Virus record (IMG/VR): IMGVR_UViG_3300046516_001816
Location: 186,001-250,000 of that record
DNA length: 64,000 bases
Reading direction: 5' to 3' (one strand)
Shown piece by piece: positions 2,336 to 62,037 of this stretch. The translations under genes were made by a program, and so were the position numbers. Each line of letters opens with the position of its first letter. The stretch's first letter is position 1. Under the pieces are notes generated by a model. The model was not told where the DNA came from, did no database searches, and saw only the letters and a list, made by a program, of their open reading frames with translations.

Positions 2336-2450
2336 GAAAAACAATAGATAAGTGGGATTGAAAATAAAAATAGACTTATATAACGTCTATGAGCGTAACC
2401 CTAAGAAATGCTCACTAATCCCATTACTCTTTATAAAGTCTGAAAACAAA

Positions 2451-4646
2451 ATGAACAACAAACTCCTTTCTGCTTTGCTCATCGGTTTCTTTGCTTCGTC
2501 GTCCGCGATGGCCAGCTGCGGCAACGGTAGTAGCGGCAATGGCTGCTCGGGCAGCTCGCCGGAGACGATCAGTTCGGTGAATATCAACGGCACTACCGTC
2601 ACAACGAAGCTTTCGGACGGCAGTTCGGTTTCGGGTTCGGTCACGGGTCTGGCGACGTCCGCGCAACTCAGCACCACCAACAACAACGTCGCGGTGAACA
2701 CCGCATCTATCAACGGCATGCAGACGCAGCTCAACAGCGCCACGTCGGGCTTGAGCAACGTCTCCCAAGGTCTGGTCGCTGAAGGCAATCGCGCTGTCGC
2801 AGCTGAGGCGGGTCTTCAGTCGCAACTGAACGGAGCCATTTCGCAAGCAGGTGCCGCCATCGGTGGCCTGCAAGCTGCGCAAACGCAAACGCAGACCCAG
2901 GTCAACGCGAACACCGCAGCGATCTCGGCTAACGCTGATCAAATCGTCGCCGTGGGCAATGCCGTGACTTCGGAAAGCACGCGCGCCAGCGCCGCTGAAG
3001 GAACGCTCGCGGGTGGTGTGGCAGCCAACTCGGTAGCCGTCGTCGCTGAAACGAGCCGCGCAACCACTGCTGAAGGTGGCCTGCAATCGCAAATCACCGC
3101 GACGAATTCGCAGGTTGCCTCCAACACGTCGGCGATCGGGACCAACGCGCAAGCTATCTCCGCGGAGACGCAACGCGCGACCGCTGCTGAAACGACCATC
3201 AAGGCCCAAGCCACGGGCGCCATGGCTACGGCCAGCAGCGCGCTGGACAACTCCAACACGGCCATGAACACGGCCAATGCTGCGAGCACCACGGCCGGTC
3301 AAGCGAAGTCGATCGCTAATGGTGCGGACGCCAAGGCCAACACAGCCGTCGGTATCGCCACGGGCGCAGCGATCACGGCAACTGGTGCCGCTATCGTCGC
3401 GGGTCACGCAGAAGGTGTTGCAGAAGGTGCAGCTGCGCAAGCTAAGACGGCAACGTCGACGGCGAACACGGCATTGAGCCAGTCGGGTCAGGCACTGAAT
3501 GCTGCATCGAACGCAGGCACGGCAGCGGCGGCTGCACAAGTCACGGCCAATCAAGGCGTGGCGAATGCAGCGCATGCTCAGGGCACGGCCAATGCAGCAC
3601 TGGCTGCCGCGAAGGATGCGGATGCGGACGCGGATCACGCGCAAGCGACGGCTAACCATGCTGACAAGGCAGCCGCGGCTGCTCAGTCGACGGGCAATGC
3701 CGCCCTGTCGCTGGCAGGTACGGCGCAAGCCACGGGTACGGCTGCACTGACGCTCGCTGGTCAAGGTGTGGCGGCTGCCGGCAAAGCACAAGCCACGGCT
3801 AACGTAGCGTTGGGTGTAGGTATTGCAGCAGGGGCAGCTGCCGCGCATGCGCAAGGTACCGCGAATGCAGCTCTGACGGCCACGGGTGCAGAAACCAGCC
3901 GGGCGACAGCCGCAGAGCAACACCTGCAATCGCAGACGACGGCCAATGCATCGGCTATCTCGAGCGAAACGTCGCGCGCTTCGGCTGCTGAAGCGAACCT
4001 GCAAAAGCAGACCACGTCGAACACGAAGGCTATCAAGTCGGAAAGCCAACGTGCTCAAGCTGCGGAAGCCACGAACGCTCATGCCATCTCGGCAGAAACG
4101 TCACGTGCAACTGCGGCTGAAACGAATCTGCAAAAGCAAACCGATGCCAACGGGAAGGCTATCACCACCGAGTCCGCTCGGGCCCAGGGCGCCGAAGCCG
4201 GTATCCAGTCGCAAGTGACGACGCAAGGCAGCAGCATCACCGATCTGCAACAGAAGCAAGCGAATGACACGGTCGCTCAGGCAAAAGCCATGGTCGACAC
4301 GTCGGCGCAAGATCGTGCGTATGCGCAATCGCTGCAACACGATGCCATTCAGCAGTCCCAGCAGTATACGGACATGAAGTTCAATCAAGCTGAAGCGGAT
4401 ATCTCGAAGCTGCGTAGCGATATGTACGGTGGTGTCGCGTCGGCCCTGGCAGTTGCAGGTCTGCCGCAAGCTACGCCGGGTCACACGCTGGTGGGTGGTG
4501 CTGCATCGACCTACCATGGCCAACAAGCCCTGGCGTTCGGTGCGTCGTTCGCCACTGCCAATGAGCACTGGATTGTCAAGGCCGCAGTGACCACGAATAC
4601 CCGTGGTGACTTCGGTGCAGTGATCGGTGCGGGTCGTCAGTTCTAA
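2451..4646 (+). CDS. YadA-type trimeric autotransporter adhesin
   Basis: Signal peptide MNNKLLSALLIGFFASSSAMA; Ala-rich coiled-coil stalk with E(T/S)xRAxAAE repeats; YTD motif; C-terminal anchor GGVASALAVAGLPQ...GAGRQF ending in Phe. Confidence 0.9.
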   Translation: MNNKLLSALLIGFFASSSAMASCGNGSSGNGCSGSSPETISSVNINGTTVTTKLSDGSSVSGSVTGLATSAQLSTTNNNVAVNTASINGMQTQLNSATSGLSNVSQGLVAEGNRAVAAEAGLQSQLNGAISQAGAAIGGLQAAQTQTQTQVNANTAAISANADQIVAVGNAVTSESTRASAAEGTLAGGVAANSVAVVAETSRATTAEGGLQSQITATNSQVASNTSAIGTNAQAISAETQRATAAETTIKAQATGAMATASSALDNSNTAMNTANAASTTAGQAKSIANGADAKANTAVGIATGAAITATGAAIVAGHAEGVAEGAAAQAKTATSTANTALSQSGQALNAASNAGTAAAAAQVTANQGVANAAHAQGTANAALAAAKDADADADHAQATANHADKAAAAAQSTGNAALSLAGTAQATGTAALTLAGQGVAAAGKAQATANVALGVGIAAGAAAAHAQGTANAALTATGAETSRATAAEQHLQSQTTANASAISSETSRASAAEANLQKQTTSNTKAIKSESQRAQAAEATNAHAISAETSRATAAETNLQKQTDANGKAITTESARAQGAEAGIQSQVTTQGSSITDLQQKQANDTVAQAKAMVDTSAQDRAYAQSLQHDAIQQSQQYTDMKFNQAEADISKLRSDMYGGVASALAVAGLPQATPGHTLVGGAASTYHGQQALAFGASFATANEHWIVKAAVTTNTRGDFGAVIGAGRQF

Positions 4647-16943: not shown

Positions 16944-17183
16944 ATGAAAGATATCGTAGAAGCACTGAAAGCGCTCACCGCTTCGATTGCAGCGGTCGAC
17001 AAAGAAACGCAAAAAACCAAACGGGCGATTTCCCCGGCTGAGGCGAAGGTCATTACCCAGATGCGTAAGGAGCTGCGCAGCCTGCGTAAGGACTTTATCA
17101 AAGTCTGTACCTTGCCGGCGACCCAGGTCGCGAAAATCTTCGGCATCTCCGAGTCTCGGGTCTATCAGATCCGCGGCGAGTAA
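16944..17183 (+). CDS. Small helix-turn-helix protein
   Basis: C-terminal ATQVAKIFGISESRVYQI HTH; TAAACCAAGGA leader. Confidence 0.65.
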   Translation: MKDIVEALKALTASIAAVDKETQKTKRAISPAEAKVITQMRKELRSLRKDFIKVCTLPATQVAKIFGISESRVYQIRGE

Positions 17184-17204
17184 CACTGACTGACGGCATA
17201 AACG

Positions 17205-17228
17205 GGGAGAGCTTCGGCTCTCCCTTTT
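17205..17228 (+). terminator. Intrinsic terminator just upstream of the array promoter
   Basis: GGGAGAGC-TTCG-GCTCTCCC followed by TTTT. Confidence 0.85.
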
Positions 17229-17253: not shown

Positions 17254-17261
17254 TATATTAC
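17254..17261 (+). promoter_or_regulatory. phiKZ-type early promoter TATATTAC upstream of the TIGR array
   Basis: Exact match to the phiKZ early promoter consensus, 18 nt upstream of the first repeat. Confidence 0.65.
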
Positions 17262-17278
17262 TACTTTGAAGCTGAGGC

Positions 17279-19378
17279 TTTGAATCATTTTTCATAACTC
17301 ACCCATCAGGAGCAAATGTATCACGAGATCCAGGCTTCCAATATATAAGAGTGTGGCAAATGAAAGCAGTCGCACACCGAACGGAAACGCACCCTGTTGT
17401 TTAGTCACCCAAACCAAACCAGTGTATCAAAGCGATTCATGCACCCAGCTCGCGCAGTGTATCAATGAACTTCAGGCATCCGGGTACGGAAGTGCGTCGA
17501 ATCCATCACGCTCCCATCGTGGATGAGCGCGTCGACAGGGAAAATCCACCCAATGCAAGCTGAGCGCATCAACGATGTAAACTCACCCGATTCAACGTAG
17601 TGAGATAGAGAGACCAACGCCCCCACGAATCGTTAGCGTGTCATAGACGTTGAGTCGCCCAATATGTAGCAGCGTACCATGTGATAATAGTCACCCTTAA
17701 AGGACAAGTGCGTCAATAGCAAAGTGTCCGCCAGTTGAAGTCAACGTATCAAGGACAACCGCCAGTCAACCAGCTGTGAAGAGTGAACTTTCAAGAAGAG
17801 GCGCCCAGAAGGGGTCAGTGTGACAGGGCAGATAAGTCACCCATCGTTTCGAACTGAGTCAAGAACATGTGAGCCTACCGGGTTAACATGCGTACCATGG
17901 GGCGAGCGTCACCCATTTAAGTTCAGTGTGTCATACGGCAAATGTAACCCAAATAGATTTCGTAGTGAAGCAATGGATAGAAGGCACCCAATGTCTACGA
18001 TTGTATCAAAAGACTAGCTCCACCCAAGGTCTTCTAGTGTATCAATCTGGTATTGCCGACCATAAGTGGGCCAGTGCGCCAAAAGACGAAAGTAGTCCAG
18101 CAGGAAGTAAGTGTAACACGAGAGATATGACGTCCATACTCAACAACTGTGTCACGCGTGTCAGTCGTCCAGACAGGTAAAGTGCATCACAGAAACTACT
18201 TCCTCCAGTACGAAGAAGTGGATCAGTCCGTGCGCAGTCACCCATAGAGCATGAGTGTTTCAGAAGGGTTCAATGCAACCGATGTAGTTGAGTGCATCAA
18301 GCCGCATAGCGACACCCAAAGATGATGAGTGTATCAAAAGACCTAATTTTTACCCATAGACTAGGTGTGTATCATTCCGAAGCAGTCACCCAGTGAACAG
18401 TAATGTATCAAGGTAGGACGATGTCGCCCAGCGATTCGAGTGTAGCACGGTAGATGTGTCATCCAGAACAGGTATTTGTATCAAATAGCATAGTCATCCA
18501 GAGTGGACCAGTGGATCAGAACCATTGATTCAACCGAACGACCCAGTGCAGCAAAGGAGTCTAGTCGCACAGTAGTCGCATTGCAGCAACATTGCACAGT
18601 CCCCCATATCGTCCGATTGTATCAAAACTTGTAATGCCTCCAGTAATACTTAGTGTAGCAATCTGCTCCAGTCACCCATTGTGATAGATTGTAGCAAATG
18701 AGGATAGCCACCCTATGTGAGCAATTATATCAGCAATCATAAACCCTCCATAGTTAGCTAGTGGATCAAGGTGTCTATGTCACCCAGATCGACCCAGTGT
18801 AGCAAAGAACGGGAGTCCACCGCAAAACCGATTTGAACCAAAGTTATTACGCGCCCAAAACATGGAAGTGGGTCATGGAGAAACATTTCACCCAGCCCCG
18901 TTGACCGTATCAGTCTGCAAACTTCACCCATTGTAACACAGTGTATCATTGTAGGGTAGTCACCCGGAATCCTAACTGAACCAGAGACAGGAAGCCGCCC
19001 GATTAATAACAGTGTATCAACCTGAACATGTCGCCCAGATTGTCTTAGTGTATCAAAGTACGCACTGCATCCATTGAAATTCAGTGTATCGCAGTTGTAG
19101 AGTCGACCATATCTGGAAAGTGTAGCAAGATGGATTAGCCTTCCAATCCAGGAATGGAATCAAGTGCAACAAGCCACCCGTCGTAAGCTAGTGTATCAAT
19201 CACGCAAATCCACCCAACCAGTATTAGTGTATCAGTGCATTGAATTCCCCCATTGGAGAGAAGTGTATTAAGGTCCGAAAGTCCAGCAAATCGTAATAGT
19301 GCATCAGGGTTTTACAGTCACCCATCGTGCTCATGTGTATCAATCATCATCAGGCACCCAGAGTAGTTCAGTGTCAAC
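17279..19378 (+). repeat. TIGR-like dual-repeat array (~58 units of ~36 nt) encoding putative tigRNA guides
   Basis: Alternating degenerate 9-nt repeats AGTCACCCA and AGTGTATCA separated by ~9-nt unique spacers, e.g. 17403 AGTCACCCA-aaccaaacc-AGTGTATCA-aagcgattc; no credible ORF; abuts a Nop-domain gene. Confidence 0.9.
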
Positions 19379-19407
19379 AAACTAAACCAAACCAAGGAAA
19401 CTGTATC

Positions 19408-20652
19408 ATGACGACGCAACTCACTCCCGCATATAACCCCAACCTGGCTGTGATCCGCACGATGGTGCGCTCGGCCTACGATATGCAGGATCTGCGCATT
19501 CAGATGGGCAACCGTGTGACGGCTAGCTTCAAGGCCAAGCTCGGATTGCGTCAAGACGGCATGAGCGAGAAAGAGCTCGAGAAGCAAGAGAAGGGCATCC
19601 TCGATCAGCTGCGCGTGTCCTATCGTCGTATCACCGACGGCGTCGTGGCCGAACACGGCGAAGACATCAAAGCCGGCAAGCTCCCCACGGAACGCAAGTT
19701 CCAGGGCGACCAGTTGATTAGCCACTACAGCGAACTGCTGCTGGTGGATAACTACATGGCGACGCTCGCCAACGAACAACATCACTTCAAGGATATGGAA
19801 AAGATCCTGAAGAAGATCCCCATCTACACGGAATTCCTTACCGGTATCCGCGGCGTCGGTCCTGCCATGGCCGGCATCATCATTTCCGAAATCGACATTC
19901 ATAAAGCCGAATACCCGTCAAGCCTGTGGAAGCTCGCAGGGCTGGACGTGGTGTATATCGGGAAGTACACCGACGGCGAAGGCAAAGAGAAGACAATCCG
20001 CGGCTGGGACGTCGACTCGTGGTTCAATGACCCGGCCAACGAAGGCAAACAGTATCTGGCTGAAGGCAAGTACCCGGTGACCTACGAGGCCGTCGGCCGC
20101 TCGCGCAAGGACTTCTGTTTGGTGAAGAAGGAGTACATCAATAAAGAAGGGGAAGCCGCGCAACGTGACTCGATTACGTTCAACCCGTTTCTGAAGACGA
20201 AACTGGTGGGCGTGTTGGGCACGTCGTTTCTGCGGGCCGGCATTGCCAATGTCGATGGCAAGAAGTGCGGCGGGGCATCGCGGTTGGAACTCGCGAAGGA
20301 AGAAGGGTTCAATCCGAAGGACTACCCGGAGATGGAAGAGGACCAGGCCGTGATCGTCTATCTGCGTGCGAAGGGTCATGACGTTGTGGTGGAGCCCAGC
20401 AAGTACGCCGTGATGTATGCGGATTACAAGAACCGCCTGAACAACAACCCGAAGCACCGGGACAAAACCGCGCTGCACAAACACAACATGGCCATGCGCT
20501 TTATGGTCAAGCGTTTCTTGGTGGATCTGTACAACGCATGGCGGCGTCTGGAAGGCCTGGTGGTCGCCCCCGAGTACTCGGAAGGTGTGCTGGGTAAGGT
20601 GCACGGTCAAGCGAAGGAAGCCGGCTGGCAGCATCCGCGCTTCTCGCTGTAA
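19408..20652 (+). CDS. tasA: TasA-like Nop-domain RNA-binding protein (IS110/Nop superfamily, no nuclease domain)
   Basis: Coiled coil IRTMVRSAYDMQDLRIQMGNR; FLTGIRGVGPAMAGIIISEI; SSLWKLAGL; NPFLKTKL; C-terminal HKHNMAMRFMVKRFLVDLYNAWRRLEGL; no RuvC or HNH; directly downstream of the array. Confidence 0.85.
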   Translation: MTTQLTPAYNPNLAVIRTMVRSAYDMQDLRIQMGNRVTASFKAKLGLRQDGMSEKELEKQEKGILDQLRVSYRRITDGVVAEHGEDIKAGKLPTERKFQGDQLISHYSELLLVDNYMATLANEQHHFKDMEKILKKIPIYTEFLTGIRGVGPAMAGIIISEIDIHKAEYPSSLWKLAGLDVVYIGKYTDGEGKEKTIRGWDVDSWFNDPANEGKQYLAEGKYPVTYEAVGRSRKDFCLVKKEYINKEGEAAQRDSITFNPFLKTKLVGVLGTSFLRAGIANVDGKKCGGASRLELAKEEGFNPKDYPEMEEDQAVIVYLRAKGHDVVVEPSKYAVMYADYKNRLNNNPKHRDKTALHKHNMAMRFMVKRFLVDLYNAWRRLEGLVVAPEYSEGVLGKVHGQAKEAGWQHPRFSL

Positions 20653-20658
20653 GCGAAT

Positions 20659-20678
20659 GGGGAGCTTCGGCTCCCCTT
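20659..20678 (+). terminator. Terminator hairpin after tasA
   Basis: GGGGAGC-TTCG-GCTCCCC-TT. Confidence 0.7.
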
Positions 20679-21801: not shown

Positions 21802-22623
21802 TTACAGGTCAGAAAGAATCACCCAGAAGTCATCGGCGAGTTCCGGATTCAGCATGTACTGATAGGGCAGCCAGAAGCAGCCCGGGTTCGCGGGATCGCC
21901 CCACTGGTCGCCCCACGAATTCCGCACGAGGAAGCATTGCTTCGCATTGTCGTAACCGACGACGAGTACCGCGTGACCGCCCAGACAGTTTTCATACTGC
22001 GTGGGCATCGGCACGAAACCCGTGCGCGCGACTTCATCCGATTCGAAGGCATCGAAAATCTGGATGCCGACGATGATCGGACGATTGAACACCGCGAGCA
22101 CGTGTTGGAAAGCTTCCAGCGTTTGCGGCACCGCCTGGTACTGCAACGCCTTGTGGTTCAGCCCTTCGGCGTAGGATTCGACCGTAGGCTTGACCTTGAA
22201 GTGTTCCGTGTCGTCGCTGTACGGCCACGTGCTCTCCAACGGTGCACCGAACTTTGCGGCGACTTTGACGACGTCACGGATTTCACCGCCTGCGTCTTGA
22301 TCGACGTCACCTTCGAGGTCACGTTCGTTGTAGTAGAGGAACAGGCGCGACAGTGCTTGCGCGACGTTCGTACCCGTCTGAATGTTTTCTTCGTATTCCA
22401 GTGCACCGGCTGTGGCGTTCGCCGTGCACGAACCGAGCTGTCCCTGGTCTTTCACCGGCGAGCAATGCGCCGTGAGGTTCACCGAAGCCGGGATGGCTGC
22501 CGCGCCGAAGGTCAGATGGCCGTGGTACACATGGTCACGACTGTCGGCGGTTTTCTTTTTACGCTTATAAACGCGCGTGACCACCTTCTTTTGGGGTTCG
22601 GCGTGGTGTGGGGTATGCTGCAT
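21802..22623 (-). CDS. Papain-like C1A cysteine peptidase
   Basis: VKDQGQLGSCTANA (catalytic Cys), GGHAVLVVGYD (His), RNSWG (Asn). Confidence 0.92.
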   Translation of the reverse strand: MQHTPHHAEPQKKVVTRVYKRKKKTADSRDHVYHGHLTFGAAAIPASVNLTAHCSPVKDQGQLGSCTANATAGALEYEENIQTGTNVAQALSRLFLYYNERDLEGDVDQDAGGEIRDVVKVAAKFGAPLESTWPYSDDTEHFKVKPTVESYAEGLNHKALQYQAVPQTLEAFQHVLAVFNRPIIVGIQIFDAFESDEVARTGFVPMPTQYENCLGGHAVLVVGYDNAKQCFLVRNSWGDQWGDPANPGCFWLPYQYMLNPELADDFWVILSDL

Positions 22624-28774: not shown

Positions 28775-29317
28775 ATGACCGTACTGGATCGCAGACATAT
28801 GTTTTTCGAGAAGAACGCACTGGTTCCAGTGGTGCGTTGGCCTGAGATTGCAAATCACTTTGTGGATCCCAACGTGGTGAACTGCTACTCAGTCATGCTG
28901 GGTGAACAGGTGGTCATGACAGCTCCGTTGCAGGTCGGGGTCACGGTGAATCTGCTTGAAGCGTCGCAACCGACGCACTTGCTCGACGAACCGATTACGG
29001 ATTATATCGGAGAGGATTTCAAGCTCGCCCGATTGTATTTCCGGCTCATTAGCCGGCTCAACAATATCGATCGCATCGCCATGATTGAAGTGCTGGATGA
29101 CGTAACACACAGCCGGAGTCGCGACGGCGTGCTGGTGGAGTTCGGTTATGTCTACATGAAGCAGCTGGAGTACCTTTTTGCGGACATCCATATATCGGGT
29201 TGGCTCAATCTCCGAACAGGTGAATGCAAGGTTTCCGGCAGCCACGGCACGAACACGATGGAAGACGGTATTGAGTTAGTCGGCTACACGCTCGCGGCCA
29301 ATAGAGTATCTCAGTAA
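28775..29317 (+). CDS. Hypothetical protein
   Basis: AAGGAG RBS. Confidence 0.65.
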   Translation: MTVLDRRHMFFEKNALVPVVRWPEIANHFVDPNVVNCYSVMLGEQVVMTAPLQVGVTVNLLEASQPTHLLDEPITDYIGEDFKLARLYFRLISRLNNIDRIAMIEVLDDVTHSRSRDGVLVEFGYVYMKQLEYLFADIHISGWLNLRTGECKVSGSHGTNTMEDGIELVGYTLAANRVSQ

Positions 29318-59773: not shown

Positions 59774-59826
59774 GGTTAACAAAGCCCCAGTAGTCTCTTT
59801 TTAACTGCAAAAGGTTGGGATCACTC

Positions 59827-62037
59827 ATGACCGCACTGTTCCAAAACAAGAGCCGCATCGGCTCGCAACCGGCGACTCAGCTGGACAAGCTGGTGGGCTC
59901 GCTGCGTGAAGAAATGAACGGCCACGGTGCCGCATTCGCAGACCGCCACATCTCGAAGGCAGCCCTGTCGCTCGAATCGATCGACGCATCGCTTGCCCGC
60001 GAACTCGAAGGCTCGCTCTCGCAGCTGAACTCCGCCCTCGAAGGCATCGTCAACGAGCACGGCCTGTCGGGTGACCTGACGGCGTCGCAACGTGACGCAG
60101 CTCTGGCTGCCATGGCCATGACCGGCGACATGGGCTCGTTCCTGCACGGCCAGATCAAGCACGACATGGTCAGCACGGAATCGATGAAGTTCATCACCGT
60201 CGGTGGCGAAGACCACATGTACGAGCGTGTCAAGCCGGCACTCGAAGCGTACGACGAGAAGGAAAACAAGAACGCGGTGGTGTACTCCGTCGCGTACAAC
60301 TTGCAAGCTGCACGCCAGGACGAATTCGGCGAAGCCTTCTACCCGACCGTCGTCGTGACGCCGGACCAAGTGGGCTACACGGTTTCGATCCGCCTGATCG
60401 AAGTGTACAACGAGCCGAAGCGCGCAATCAGCGGCGCTCCCTCGCAGAACTTCGGCCGCAAGAACATCGTGCAAGCCGTGATCGATCCGTCGATCCTGCG
60501 CAACGACCAAACGAAGATCGTTCCGGTCTATCGCACGGAAAGCGCACCGTACTTCGTGACGAACGCGGCCGTCGAGCCGTACAACGTCATGATGACGGAC
60601 AACACGTCGGTCCTGACCGCACCGCTGGCAGTGGGCCAGAAGTTCTCGCTGCTCGGCCTGTCGCAAACGGAAGCGCTGCTCGAAACGGGTATCCTCGACG
60701 TCACCGACGCCATCGACAGCTCGATCTACCTGTCGGCTGTGTACGTCCAGTTCACGACCGGTGGCGCAACGCCGACCGTGGAAACGGTGAAGTTCAACAC
60801 GCGTCAACTGCCGCTCGCGTCGTTCAACTACGCACAGCAGAACGTCTACCGTCAGATGAACCTCCAGTTCAAGACGGAAACGCTGCTCATCGGCGCGAAC
60901 ACGGTTCAAGCTGACGGCGCTGCATCGACGATCCTCGCACCGATCGTGTCGGGCGACTACGAAGCGCGTTTCGGCTTCTCGATGTTCGGTTCGGTGAACC
61001 TCGAACTCGGCGACACCGAAATCAACGCATCGAACGTCGGCGTGAACACGATCAAGAATTCGAGCGATCAGTCGCTGGATCTGACGACGGGCACGGGCGC
61101 GACGCTGGCTGCGCTGTTCGCAGGCGCGAAGGTCGTGGGTTACGACCTGGAAGCTCATCGTACCAACAGCAACCGTCGTCAACGCGGCCAGCTGCTGAAC
61201 ACGAACTTCTACAACCAGATCTACACGGTGCCGCTGCTGGCTCCGATCTCGATTCCGCGTCCGATGGCTGTGGGCGATTCGAACGACTCGAGCGATCTGG
61301 CTTCGCTGATCACGGCAACGCGTATCCGTACGTCGAACGCCGCAGTCGACGCCATCTTCACGATGCAAGACCTGCTCGCGGAAACGACGTCGGCGCTGAA
61401 CACCGGTGCTGCTCCGAATGCTGCTGCCGACACCCCGGAAATCCTGGGCGTGACGCGCTTCATCATTCAGCCGGCGTACATGACGAAGAACCTGGCAATC
61501 GACACGCAGACGGACAGCCTCTCGGCTCACCAACGCGCGGCCGACATCCAAGCTTCGCTCATCAACTGCCTGCGCGACATGGCGTACACGCTGTACGTGC
61601 AATCGGGCTACAAGGCAGCTGCGGACGCACTCGCAGGTGGCGTGGGTCCGGTGCCGACGGTCATCATCGGTACGGATCCGTACATCGCGCGTTACCTGAT
61701 GGTGACGGGCGACCTGCGTACGCTGGGTGGTCAGTTCGACGTGAAGATCGTGTCGACGCTGAACGAACGCATGACGGGCAAGATCGTGATGAGCTTCGGC
61801 GACTTCTCGAACGAGCGCGCTGGCGTGCCCAACCCGCTGCACTTCGGTAACATGGCATGGAAGCCGGAAGTCACGGTCGTCCTGCCGATGATCCGCAACG
61901 GCGCACAATCGAAGGAACTCACGGTCCAGCCGTCGTTCCTGCACGTCACGAACCTGCCGGTTCTCGGCGTGGTCAACGTCTCCGGTATCAGCAACATTGC
62001 GTACAGCAAGGTGCCGGTCAACTTCCATACCGTTTAA
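59827..62037 (+). CDS. Major capsid protein (phiKZ gp120 type)
   Basis: ~736 aa; ALEAYDE processing site; ARQDEFGEAFYPTVVV and NSNRRQRGQL motifs; very strong codon bias; synteny. Confidence 0.92.
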   Translation: MTALFQNKSRIGSQPATQLDKLVGSLREEMNGHGAAFADRHISKAALSLESIDASLARELEGSLSQLNSALEGIVNEHGLSGDLTASQRDAALAAMAMTGDMGSFLHGQIKHDMVSTESMKFITVGGEDHMYERVKPALEAYDEKENKNAVVYSVAYNLQAARQDEFGEAFYPTVVVTPDQVGYTVSIRLIEVYNEPKRAISGAPSQNFGRKNIVQAVIDPSILRNDQTKIVPVYRTESAPYFVTNAAVEPYNVMMTDNTSVLTAPLAVGQKFSLLGLSQTEALLETGILDVTDAIDSSIYLSAVYVQFTTGGATPTVETVKFNTRQLPLASFNYAQQNVYRQMNLQFKTETLLIGANTVQADGAASTILAPIVSGDYEARFGFSMFGSVNLELGDTEINASNVGVNTIKNSSDQSLDLTTGTGATLAALFAGAKVVGYDLEAHRTNSNRRQRGQLLNTNFYNQIYTVPLLAPISIPRPMAVGDSNDSSDLASLITATRIRTSNAAVDAIFTMQDLLAETTSALNTGAAPNAAADTPEILGVTRFIIQPAYMTKNLAIDTQTDSLSAHQRAADIQASLINCLRDMAYTLYVQSGYKAAADALAGGVGPVPTVIIGTDPYIARYLMVTGDLRTLGGQFDVKIVSTLNERMTGKIVMSFGDFSNERAGVPNPLHFGNMAWKPEVTVVLPMIRNGAQSKELTVQPSFLHVTNLPVLGVVNVSGISNIAYSKVPVNFHTV

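What the first reader, a model, noticed from the sequence alone, without database searches (positions are those of the whole stretch)
17254..20678. TIGR-Tas-type RNA-guided system: ~58-unit dual-repeat guide array plus TasA gene in a jumbo phage
Seen in sequence: 2.1 kb without a credible ORF is tiled by ~36-nt units of two alternating 9-nt repeats (consensus AGTGTATCA and AGTCACCCA) separated by two unique ~9-nt spacers. An example is 19316 AGTCACCCA-tcgtgctca-TGTGTATCA-atcatcatc-AGGCACCCA-gagtagttc. An exact TATATTAC early promoter lies upstream, and a Nop-domain gene with its own terminator follows directly. Established knowledge: TIGR arrays yield 36-nt tigRNAs with two 9-nt spacers that guide Tas proteins to both strands of a DNA target without a PAM. 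Inference: this is a large, self-contained, early-expressed guide repertoire of ~58 guides, probably directed at competing phages, mobile elements or host genes. The array begins and ends on the AGTGTATCA-type repeat, which suggests it is the edge (processed) repeat and AGTCACCCA is the loop repeat.
Basis: partly seen in the sequence, partly recalled or inferred. Interest (0 to 1): 0.96.

Follow-up and report, generated by a model that had tools for sequence, protein, structure and literature searches.

The report
Jumbo-phage TIGR guide array with TasA

Summary
Window 17279-19378 (+) is tiled by 58 units of edge repeat (AGTGTATCA), spacer A, loop repeat (AGTCACCCA) and spacer B. The array starts on a 5'-degenerate edge repeat and ends on a 3'-truncated one. 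The gene 30 nt downstream (19408-20652, 414 aa) is a Tas protein. Its best sequence and fold matches are the solved TasR and TasH structures. It has no N-terminal RuvC or HNH domain, so it is TasA-type, and it keeps a Tyr/His pair where SpTasH has its pre-tigRNA processing dyad.

The contig is a 284,983-bp IMG/VR viral genome with a phiKZ-like major head protein. Related jumbo-phage contigs and cultured Ralstonia phage phiRSL1 carry the same repeats and arrays of about 25-54 units, always on the tas strand.

In homologous units of three related phages, spacers diverge 2-6%, against 21-27% at tas third-codon positions. Whole units are replaced all along the array, and a relative whose Tas is 93% identical shares only about 20% of spacers.

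No self-targets were found in the window or in the whole phiRSL1 genome. One weak lead points to the head-gene junction of another phage.

Verdict: a new, large member of a known kind. Early expression and the targets remain inferred.

The parts
17204..17225 (+). Terminator-like hairpin (GGGGAGAGC-TTCG-GCTCTCCC, then TTTTGTG) ending the upstream 79-aa gene. It isolates the array from upstream transcription.
   Evidence: -25.1 kcal/mol, z -6.2
17254..17261 (+). Promoter-like motif TATATTAC (the phiKZ early-promoter consensus), preceded by a T-run and 18 nt upstream of the first repeat. Function is inferred.
   Evidence: Similar TATAT(A/T)AC-like motifs sit 20-60 nt upstream of the first repeat in relatives L004, L009 and L010. 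L005-L007 have none.
17279..19378 (+). TIGR dual-repeat array of 58 units: edge repeat AGTGTATCA, spacer A, loop repeat AGTCACCCA, spacer B. The first edge repeat is 5'-degenerate (TTTGAATCA). The last one (19370-19378) is 3'-truncated (AGTGTCAAC).
18652..18687 (+). Unit 39 (spacers ATCTGCTCC / TTGTGATAG). Both spacers are identical in four related jumbo-phage contigs whose Tas is only 77% identical, so this is a conserved core guide.
19334..19369 (+). Unit 58 (spacers ATCATCATC / GAGTAGTTC). Its predicted 18-bp target has one exact match just upstream of the major-head-protein gene of another phage. This is a lead only.
19394..19399 (+). Ribosome-binding site AAGGAA, 8 nt before the tas start codon. 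There is no hairpin between the array and tas, so the two are probably co-transcribed.
19408..20652 (+). tasA: a 414-aa Nop-fold Tas protein without a nuclease domain. It has coiled-coil helices (residues 13-134), a C-terminal Y390/H399 pair, and two clade-specific insertions (about 186-227 and 277-331).
20659..20676 (+). Hairpin GGGGAGC-TTCG-GCTCCCC after tas. It is the likely 3' end of the array-tas transcript. It has no U-tract.
   Evidence: -15.3 kcal/mol, z -3.6

Best explanation
This is a dual-repeat TIGR-TasA locus of an uncultured phiKZ-like jumbo phage.

Shown here: the array anatomy, the Tas fold, the absence of a nuclease domain, conservation of the locus across related phages, and strong conservation of spacers in retained units.

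Inferred by homology with characterised TIGR systems: the array and tasA are transcribed together on the + strand from a phage promoter near 17254. TasA binds the shared repeat ends (AGU... at the start, ...CA/CCA at the end). It cuts the precursor inside each edge repeat with its C-terminal Tyr/His pair, giving about 36-nt tigRNAs. A TasA dimer carrying one tigRNA then binds an 18-bp DNA site, with spacer A on one strand and spacer B on the other. Because it has no nuclease, it blocks transcription or replication rather than cutting.

Inferred from the negative self-target searches: the targets are not in the phage itself. They are more likely in the host or in competing mobile elements.
For: Array:
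- 58 alternating units with truncated terminal edge repeats, as defined in Faure 2025 (PMC12045711).
- Both repeats share AGU at the 5' end and CA at the 3' end, comparable to the published box D / box C arrangement.

Protein:
- NCBIfam TIGR_Tas_endo E 1.8e-26.
- phmmer and a family profile hit only TasH and TasR among PDB sequences with meaningful scores, the profile at 9e-17 to TaTasR.
- Foldseek top nine hits are all TasH/TasR at probability 1.0, followed by IS621 recombinase and, further down, Nop5.
- Residue 24 of this protein aligns to TaTasR residue 123, so the roughly 100-residue N-terminal RuvC domain is absent.
- Y390 aligns to SpTasH Y289. H399 is invariant in 28 homologs and lies 2 columns from the SpTasH H296 column. 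Y289/H296 is the published processing dyad (PMC13421893).

Conservation:
- The same repeats and arrays, on the tas strand only, occur in 10 related loci including phiRSL1.
- In units anchored by the neighbouring spacer, spacers diverge 0.02-0.06, repeats 0.08-0.12 and tas third-codon positions 0.21-0.27.

Function:
- TasA RNPs repress transcription in reporter assays (bioRxiv 10.64898/2026.09.09.750476).
- No self-targets at 2 mismatches or fewer in the 64-kb window or in 194 kb of window plus related-phage loci. In the whole 231-kb phiRSL1 genome none at 1 mismatch or fewer, and 2 at two mismatches against 0.4 in controls.
Against: - No RNA or binding data exist for this locus.
- The NCBIfam score (93.4) is below the curated cut-off (100). 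Pfam gives no significant hit, only Transposase_20 at E 0.04.
- Only 24 of 58 units are strictly canonical. The promoter-distal half of the logic, that all 58 units make working guides, is therefore not supported for the degenerate units, which cluster in the first third of the array.
- The promoter assignment rests on a motif seen twice in 64 kb and missing upstream of the L005-L007 arrays.
- The two insertions, about 95 aa in total, have no recognisable fold, so an added activity cannot be excluded.
- No natural target was identified.
Confidence: 0.85

Rival explanations
1. The guides regulate the phage's own genes, as a temporal programme in which TasA RNPs sit on the phage's own promoters or genes.
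For: Spacers in retained units are far more conserved than synonymous sites, as expected if the targets co-evolve slowly with the phage. TasA acts as a repressor.
Against: No match with 2 mismatches or fewer to any of 43 9+9 guides in the 64-kb window, which is 22% of the genome. Hits at 3 mismatches equal the mispaired controls. In phiRSL1, scanned over its full 231 kb, there is no match at 1 mismatch or fewer and only 2 at two mismatches, against 0.4 expected. The predicted targets of units 39, 54, 55, 57 and 58 have no exact copy on the phage's own IMG/VR contig.
Confidence: 0.07
2. The protein is not a plain binder. Its two clade-specific insertions carry or recruit a catalytic activity such as a nuclease, making it a new effector type.
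For: Two insertions (about residues 186-227 and 277-331) are absent from the phiRSL1 homolog and from the 287-aa viral Tas that is the best structural match. They are predicted with high confidence in the full-length model. Published dual-repeat Tas proteins are described as having a compact Nop core.
Against: No invariant Asp, Glu or His lies inside the insertions in 27-28 homologs; the conserved residues there are Gly, Arg, Lys and Tyr. Neither a profile search against PDB sequences nor Foldseek on a model of the segment found a nuclease or any other fold; all Foldseek hits had E > 0.2.
Confidence: 0.05
3. The array is a decaying relic, or a structural or satellite repeat, with no guide function.
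For: Many units are degenerate, especially among the first 20, and 25 of 58 have spacers of other than 9+9 nt.
Against: The array and gene are conserved together in many jumbo-phage contigs from different samples. Key repeat positions (G4 and C8 of the repeats) almost never change, and spacers are 4-10 times more conserved than tas third-codon positions. The tas ORF is intact and keeps its Y/H pair.
Confidence: 0.03

Closest known systems
Dual-repeat TIGR-TasA systems (e.g. the Flavonifractor plautii FpTIGR locus; Faure et al. 2025, PMC12045711)
   Same: Two alternating repeats of about 9 nt with 9-nt spacers and a 36-nt unit. Truncated edge repeats at both array ends. An adjacent solo Nop-fold Tas gene without a nuclease. 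A C-terminal Tyr/His pair, as in dual-repeat systems.
   Different: 58 units here, against 'most often 5 to 15' in Faure 2025 and a mean of about 16 per dual-repeat array in the TIGRFinder census (65,635 tigRNAs in 4,126 arrays). The array runs straight into tas instead of ending at a terminator. The protein is about 130 aa longer because of two insertions. The shared repeat ends read AGU...CA rather than UG...CCA.
SpTasH of Salicola phage CGphi29 and TaTasR (PDB 9w04, 21kl, 9mty)
   Same: Best sequence and fold matches. Same coiled-coil plus Nop C-terminal domain. Y390 aligns with the catalytic Y289 of SpTasH.
   Different: This protein has no HNH or RuvC domain. Identity is only about 15% in the structural alignments.
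Ralstonia phage phiRSL1 ORF034 ('transposase') and the unannotated 1.3-kb stretch after it
   Same: The only cultured-phage homolog in the 50,697-record phage collection searched (30% identity). It is followed by an array of about 37 units with AGTCACCCA-type loop repeats on the same strand.
   Different: The phiRSL1 array lies downstream of the gene. Its protein lacks both insertions. phiRSL1 is not phiKZ-like.
IS110/IS621 bridge-RNA recombinases
   Same: A shared RNA-binding Nop-like core: weak Transposase_20 and IS110 model hits, and Foldseek hit 8wt6 at rank 10.
   Different: No DEDD/RuvC-like N-terminal domain, and only the middle of the IS110 model is matched (19.8 bits against a cut-off of 140). 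There is an array of 58 guides instead of one bridge RNA.
Nuclease-free CRISPR systems (type IV, type V-M), as functional analogues
   Same: RNA-guided DNA binding without cutting, encoded on mobile elements and thought to interfere with competitors.
   Different: Unrelated proteins. Here a split 9+9-nt guide pairs with both DNA strands, with no PAM and no adaptation genes.

Membership tests
TIGR-Tas (dual-repeat type) | Array of two distinct alternating 8-12-nt repeats separated by spacers of about 9 nt (36-nt unit) | tested here: met
   58 units. Repeats are 9 nt. 33 units have exactly 9+9 spacers; the rest have 8-12 nt.
TIGR-Tas (dual-repeat type) | [quoted passage not shown] | tested here: inconclusive
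   The truncated edge repeats are present at both ends: TTTGAATCA at 17279 and AGTGTCAAC at 19370. No terminator follows the array. The tas gene follows it, and a hairpin comes only after tas.
TIGR-Tas (dual-repeat type) | Edge and loop repeats share box D at their start and box C at their end | tested here: met
   Both repeats start A-G-U and end C-A (CCA in the loop repeat, UCA in the edge repeat). G4/C8/A9 of the edge repeat and C4/C7/C8 of the loop repeat are 94-100% conserved, and the loop repeat's A9 is 82%. The published TasR motifs are UG and CCA, so the letters differ slightly.
TIGR-Tas (dual-repeat type) | Adjacent gene encodes a Nop-fold Tas protein with a coiled-coil dimerisation domain | tested here: met
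   NCBIfam NF052498 E 1.8e-26, but 93.4 bits against a cut-off of 100. PDB profile hit to TaTasR at 9e-17. Foldseek TasH/TasR at probability 1.0. Long helices predicted at 13-45, 54-75 and 107-134.
TIGR-Tas (dual-repeat type) | C-terminal Tyr/His processing loop | tested here: met
   Y390 and H399 are invariant in 28 homologs. Y390 aligns with SpTasH Y289, and H399 lies two columns from H296. Catalysis was not tested.
TIGR-Tas (dual-repeat type) | Array processed into 36-nt tigRNAs that the Tas protein binds and that guide it to DNA | not testable with these tools
   Needs small-RNA sequencing, pull-down and binding assays.
TasA subtype | No HNH or RuvC nuclease domain | tested here: met
   The protein starts 23 residues before the coiled coil. 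TaTasR residues 1-122 have no counterpart. No nuclease family appears in Pfam or NCBIfam. The insertions have no invariant acidic or His residues and no fold match.
IS110-family RNA-guided recombinase | Full-length match including the DEDD N-terminal and C-terminal catalytic domains, with a single bridge RNA | tested here: not met
   NF033542 scores 19.8 bits against a cut-off of 140 and covers profile positions 121-260 only. Pfam Transposase_20 scores 14.7 bits, below its cut-off.
CRISPR-Cas | Identical 25-36-nt repeats with cas genes nearby | tested here: not met
   Repeats are 9 nt and of two kinds. The neighbouring genes scanned had no Pfam match to a Cas family.
Box C/D snoRNP | Nop5-type protein working with fibrillarin and L7Ae on K-turn RNAs | tested here: not met
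   Nop5 structures match only weakly, with E > 1. No methyltransferase or L7Ae was found among the ten neighbouring ORFs scanned.

The most novel reading that the evidence does not exclude
The array is a fast-turnover, mosaic repertoire of guides against non-self DNA, with a small core under purifying selection. A phiKZ-like jumbo phage would use it to silence, without cutting, DNA that shares the cell with it.

The one concrete lead concerns unit 58. Its predicted target matches exactly the last codons of a cement-protein gene, 31-48 nt upstream of the major-head-protein start codon, in an 81.6-kb phage contig and a 135-kb phage contig. The unit 18 target lies 180 bp away in the same gene, with 2 mismatches. 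If real, this would be a first natural target for a TIGR system and would show phage-versus-phage repression of a rival's capsid gene.
Probability: 0.15. Interest if true: 0.8.

Novelty: new member of a known kind. Interest (0 to 1): 0.5.

Why it matters
TIGR-Tas was described only in 2025, and its natural role is still open. The published work states that targets, spacer acquisition and the purpose of nuclease-free TasA are unknown.

This locus and its relatives offer material for those questions:
- a clade of jumbo phages with very long arrays;
- guides that are strongly conserved where retained, but swapped unit by unit along the whole array, unlike the polar growth of CRISPR arrays;
- a cultured relative, phiRSL1, in which the system could be deleted and studied.

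The locus does not change what is known about the mechanism.

Tried and rejected
- Tandem Repeats Finder and Rfam gave nothing for the array.
- Minus-strand transcription was considered because the reverse complements read UGAUAC and GUGA. It was rejected. Every related array is co-oriented with tas, the shared ...CA/CCA repeat end fits box C on the + strand, and the truncated terminal repeats fit the + strand model.
- Self-targeting was scanned in both target geometries with mispaired-spacer controls. There was no excess in the window, in 194 kb of window plus related-phage loci, or in the complete phiRSL1 genome.
- Single 9-mer half-sites in the window: 45 observed against 33.8 +/- 6.4, not significant.
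- The predicted target of conserved unit 39 gave 4 scattered hits in 185,579 species genomes (a Paenibacillus and three archaeal genomes), none in IMG/VR in either geometry, and 7 scattered metagenome hits. All are at chance level.
- The pattern spacer A-N9-spacer B of unit 39 found only the five related arrays plus six unrelated chance matches.
- Four more guide targets (units 54, 55, 57, 58) gave 0-1 hits each in IMG/VR. The unit 57 hit has no supporting second hit.
- About 20 kb more of the candidate target phage was fetched and gave no further hits at 2 mismatches or fewer.
- A separate model of the insertion segment had pLDDT 69 and no fold match.
- BLAST searches of the phage and plasmid collections with 18-mers were not attempted, because an exact 18-nt match cannot pass the tool's E-value ceiling.
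Full report
**1. What is in the sequence.**

Between a strong hairpin that ends a 79-aa gene (17204-17225) and the ATG at 19408 lie 2.1 kb without a credible ORF. The longest ORF there is 84 aa, and the JGI gene caller placed nothing in the stretch.

A chain parse with two 9-nt matrices finds 58 A-type repeats (AGTGTATCA) and 58 B-type repeats (AGTCACCCA). They alternate strictly, 17-21 nt apart and mostly 18, from 17279 to 19360. A truncated A-type repeat follows at 19370. Every exact copy of either 9-mer in the 64-kb window lies in this stretch. The minus strand of the same locus yields one repeat.

- The best-conserved columns are G4, C8 and A9 of the A-type repeat and C4, C7 and C8 of the B-type repeat.
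- Both repeats start AGU and end CA.
- The columns between the repeats carry almost no information.
- 33 units have exactly 9+9-nt spacers, and 24 are canonical by a strict rule.
- Degenerate units cluster in the first third of the array.

**2. The protein.**

The gene 19408-20652 encodes 414 aa.

- Pfam has nothing significant.
- NCBIfam's TIGR_Tas_endo model scores 93.4 bits (E 1.8e-26), just under its curated cut-off of 100. The IS110 model scores 19.8 against a cut-off of 140.
- Among PDB sequences, only TasH and TaTasR match with meaningful scores; the family profile reaches 9e-17 against TaTasR, and the only other match listed, an arginine repressor at E 0.78, is not significant.
- An AlphaFold model built on 27 homologs has pLDDT 82.8. 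Its top nine Foldseek hits are all TasH or TasR chains at probability 1.0. IS621 recombinase follows, and Nop5 appears further down at E > 1.
- Residue 24 aligns with TaTasR residue 123, so the N-terminal RuvC domain has no counterpart. The protein is TasA-type.
- Y390 and H399 are invariant in 28 homologs. Y390 aligns with Y289 of SpTasH, which together with H296 is the published metal-independent pre-tigRNA processing dyad of dual-repeat systems.
- Two insertions (about 186-227 and 277-331) are absent from phiRSL1's homolog and from a 287-aa viral Tas that otherwise superposes well, with TM-score 0.87 on the target. They contain no invariant acidic or histidine residues. A separate model of that segment matched no known fold.

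**3. Genome and relatives.**

The window is positions 186001-250000 of a 284,983-bp IMG/VR contig. Its 740-aa major head protein belongs to the phiKZ-like family. The nearest isolates are Burkholderia phage FLC9 (53% identity) and Ralstonia phages RP12 and RP31 (43%).

The Tas protein has 1,810 database relatives. The roughly 400-aa form sits on many contigs of 160-315 kb. Ten related loci were parsed. All carry the same two repeat types on the tas strand only, with about 25 to 54 units.

Among cultured phages in the collection searched, only phiRSL1 has a homolog (30% identity), annotated as 'transposase'. The unannotated 1.3 kb after that gene is an array of about 37 units.

In the relatives whose array starts were read, the arrays begin with a 5'-degenerate A-type repeat. 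Those whose ends were read finish on a 3'-degenerate A-type repeat.

**4. Expression signals.**

TATATTAC is the published phiKZ early-promoter consensus. It lies 18 nt before the first repeat, behind a T-run.

- It is rare in the window: two exact copies. About six sites with at most one mismatch, all on the + strand, sit in AT-rich stretches that look intergenic; several lie just upstream of + strand ORF starts.
- Similar motifs precede the arrays of L004, L009 and L010, but not those of L005-L007.
- No hairpin separates the array from tas. A ribosome-binding site precedes the ATG, and a stable hairpin without a U-tract follows the stop codon.

Co-transcription of the array and tas from a phage promoter is the most economical reading. 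'Early' timing is plausible but not shown.

**5. Evidence that the guides are used.**

Three related phages (L005-L007) differ at 21-27% of tas third-codon positions. To avoid selecting on the measured sequence, homologous units were anchored on the neighbouring spacer. In those units:

- spacers differ at 2-6% of positions;
- repeats differ at 8-12%, concentrated in the non-critical columns 2, 3, 5 and 7;
- columns 4 and 8 almost never change.

Spacers are thus under stronger constraint than much of the repeat, which argues for conserved targets.

At the same time, whole 36-nt units are gained, lost or replaced all along the array rather than at one end. Turnover is rapid:

| Relative | Tas identity | Spacers shared with the window's ~115 |
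|---|---|---|
| L112 | 93% | about 23, mostly next to tas |
| L113 | 82% | about 5 |
| L005-L007 clade | 77% | 2-4 per array (five different window spacers in all) |

One full unit, unit 39, is identical across five contigs from different samples. Spacers are AT-richer than the genome (44% against 55% GC) and poor in C (17-18%).

**6. Targets.**

The published 8-nt 3' overhang implies that one target strand reads spacer A followed by the reverse complement of spacer B. Both geometries were tested, with mispaired spacers as controls.

- There is no excess of matches in the window, in 194 kb of window plus related-phage loci, or in the full phiRSL1 genome. Regulation of the phage's own genes is therefore unlikely.
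- Exact searches for five predicted targets in IMG/VR, and for unit 39 in species genomes and metagenomes, returned only chance-level, unrelated hits.

One lead remains. The unit 58 target matches exactly the last codons of a cement-protein gene, 31-48 nt before the major-head-protein ATG. The match is in an 81.6-kb phage contig and, identically, in a 135-kb one. The unit 18 target lies 180 bp away with two mismatches. By my own estimate, the chance of such a second hit within 300 bp is about 0.004. However, a further 20 kb of those genomes gave nothing, and a single exact 18-mer hit in IMG/VR is expected by chance. I record this as a lead, not a finding.

**7. Comparison and verdict.**

Every sequence-level defining feature of a dual-repeat TIGR-TasA system that could be tested is met. 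The exception is a terminator directly after the array. IS110, CRISPR and snoRNP membership all fail (see the membership table).

The locus differs from the typical published case in four ways:
- array length: 58 units, against 'most often 5 to 15' and a census mean of about 16;
- two insertions in a protein class described as compact;
- a phiKZ-like jumbo-phage setting, which no paper in the searchable library mentions together with TIGR-Tas;
- the array running straight into tas.

The published census covers 20,096 tas loci from public data. This locus may already be among them, which I could not check. It is a new, large member of a known kind. The added value here is the comparative evidence on guide conservation and unit turnover, and the pointer to phiRSL1 as a culturable model.

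Noticed in passing
L001 6014-7440 (NC_010811.2 14258-15580): Ralstonia phage phiRSL1 ORF034, annotated 'transposase', is a Tas homolog. The 1.3-kb stretch after it has no annotated gene and is a TIGR array of about 37 units with AGTCACCCA-type loop repeats. phiRSL1 is the only cultured phage in the collection searched that carries this Tas subfamily.
   Followed up: partly
L006 vs L007 arrays; L003 vs L112 and L113: Related arrays differ by gain, loss or replacement of whole 36-nt units scattered along the array, not at one end as in CRISPR. A relative whose Tas is 93% identical shares only about 20% of its spacers with the window.
   Followed up: partly
window 17279-19378 (spacers only): Spacers have 44% GC against 55% for the window and are depleted in C (17-18%). 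This may avoid spurious CCA/CA box C motifs, or it may reflect AT-rich targets.
   Followed up: no
window 2352-4646 (+): A 764-aa phage ORF ends in a YadA-like membrane-anchor domain (Pfam PF03895, E 7.5e-12), the anchor of trimeric autotransporter adhesins. This is unusual in a phage genome.
   Followed up: no
window 21802-22623 (-): A papain-family cysteine protease (PF00112, E 4.9e-18) is one of the few minus-strand genes among plus-strand genes here. A 273-aa homolog lies at a similar distance downstream of tas in relatives L113 and L114.
   Followed up: no
window 16944-17183 (+): The 79-aa gene just upstream of the array has a weak sigma-70 region 4 / helix-turn-helix signature (E about 0.003, below the Pfam cut-offs). 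The sequence upstream of the array differs in L006/L007, so it does not appear to be linked to the array.
   Followed up: no
window 17204-17225, 20659-20676: Near-identical GGGGAG(AG)C-TTCG-GC(TC)TCCCC hairpins close successive transcription units. An AACCAAGGA ribosome-binding site recurs before neighbouring genes (16930s, 19390s, 20690s).
   Followed up: no
L102, L104, L105: Three metagenome contigs with identical flanks share the exact 18-mer predicted as the target of conserved unit 39 (GC 0.45-0.47). They are probably one abundant organism hit by chance.
   Followed up: no
window 28775-29317 (+): A 172-180-aa ORF carries a PhiKZ_MCP family hit (PF25620, precomputed) about 30 kb away from the full-length 740-aa major head protein gene at 59815-62037.
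   Followed up: no
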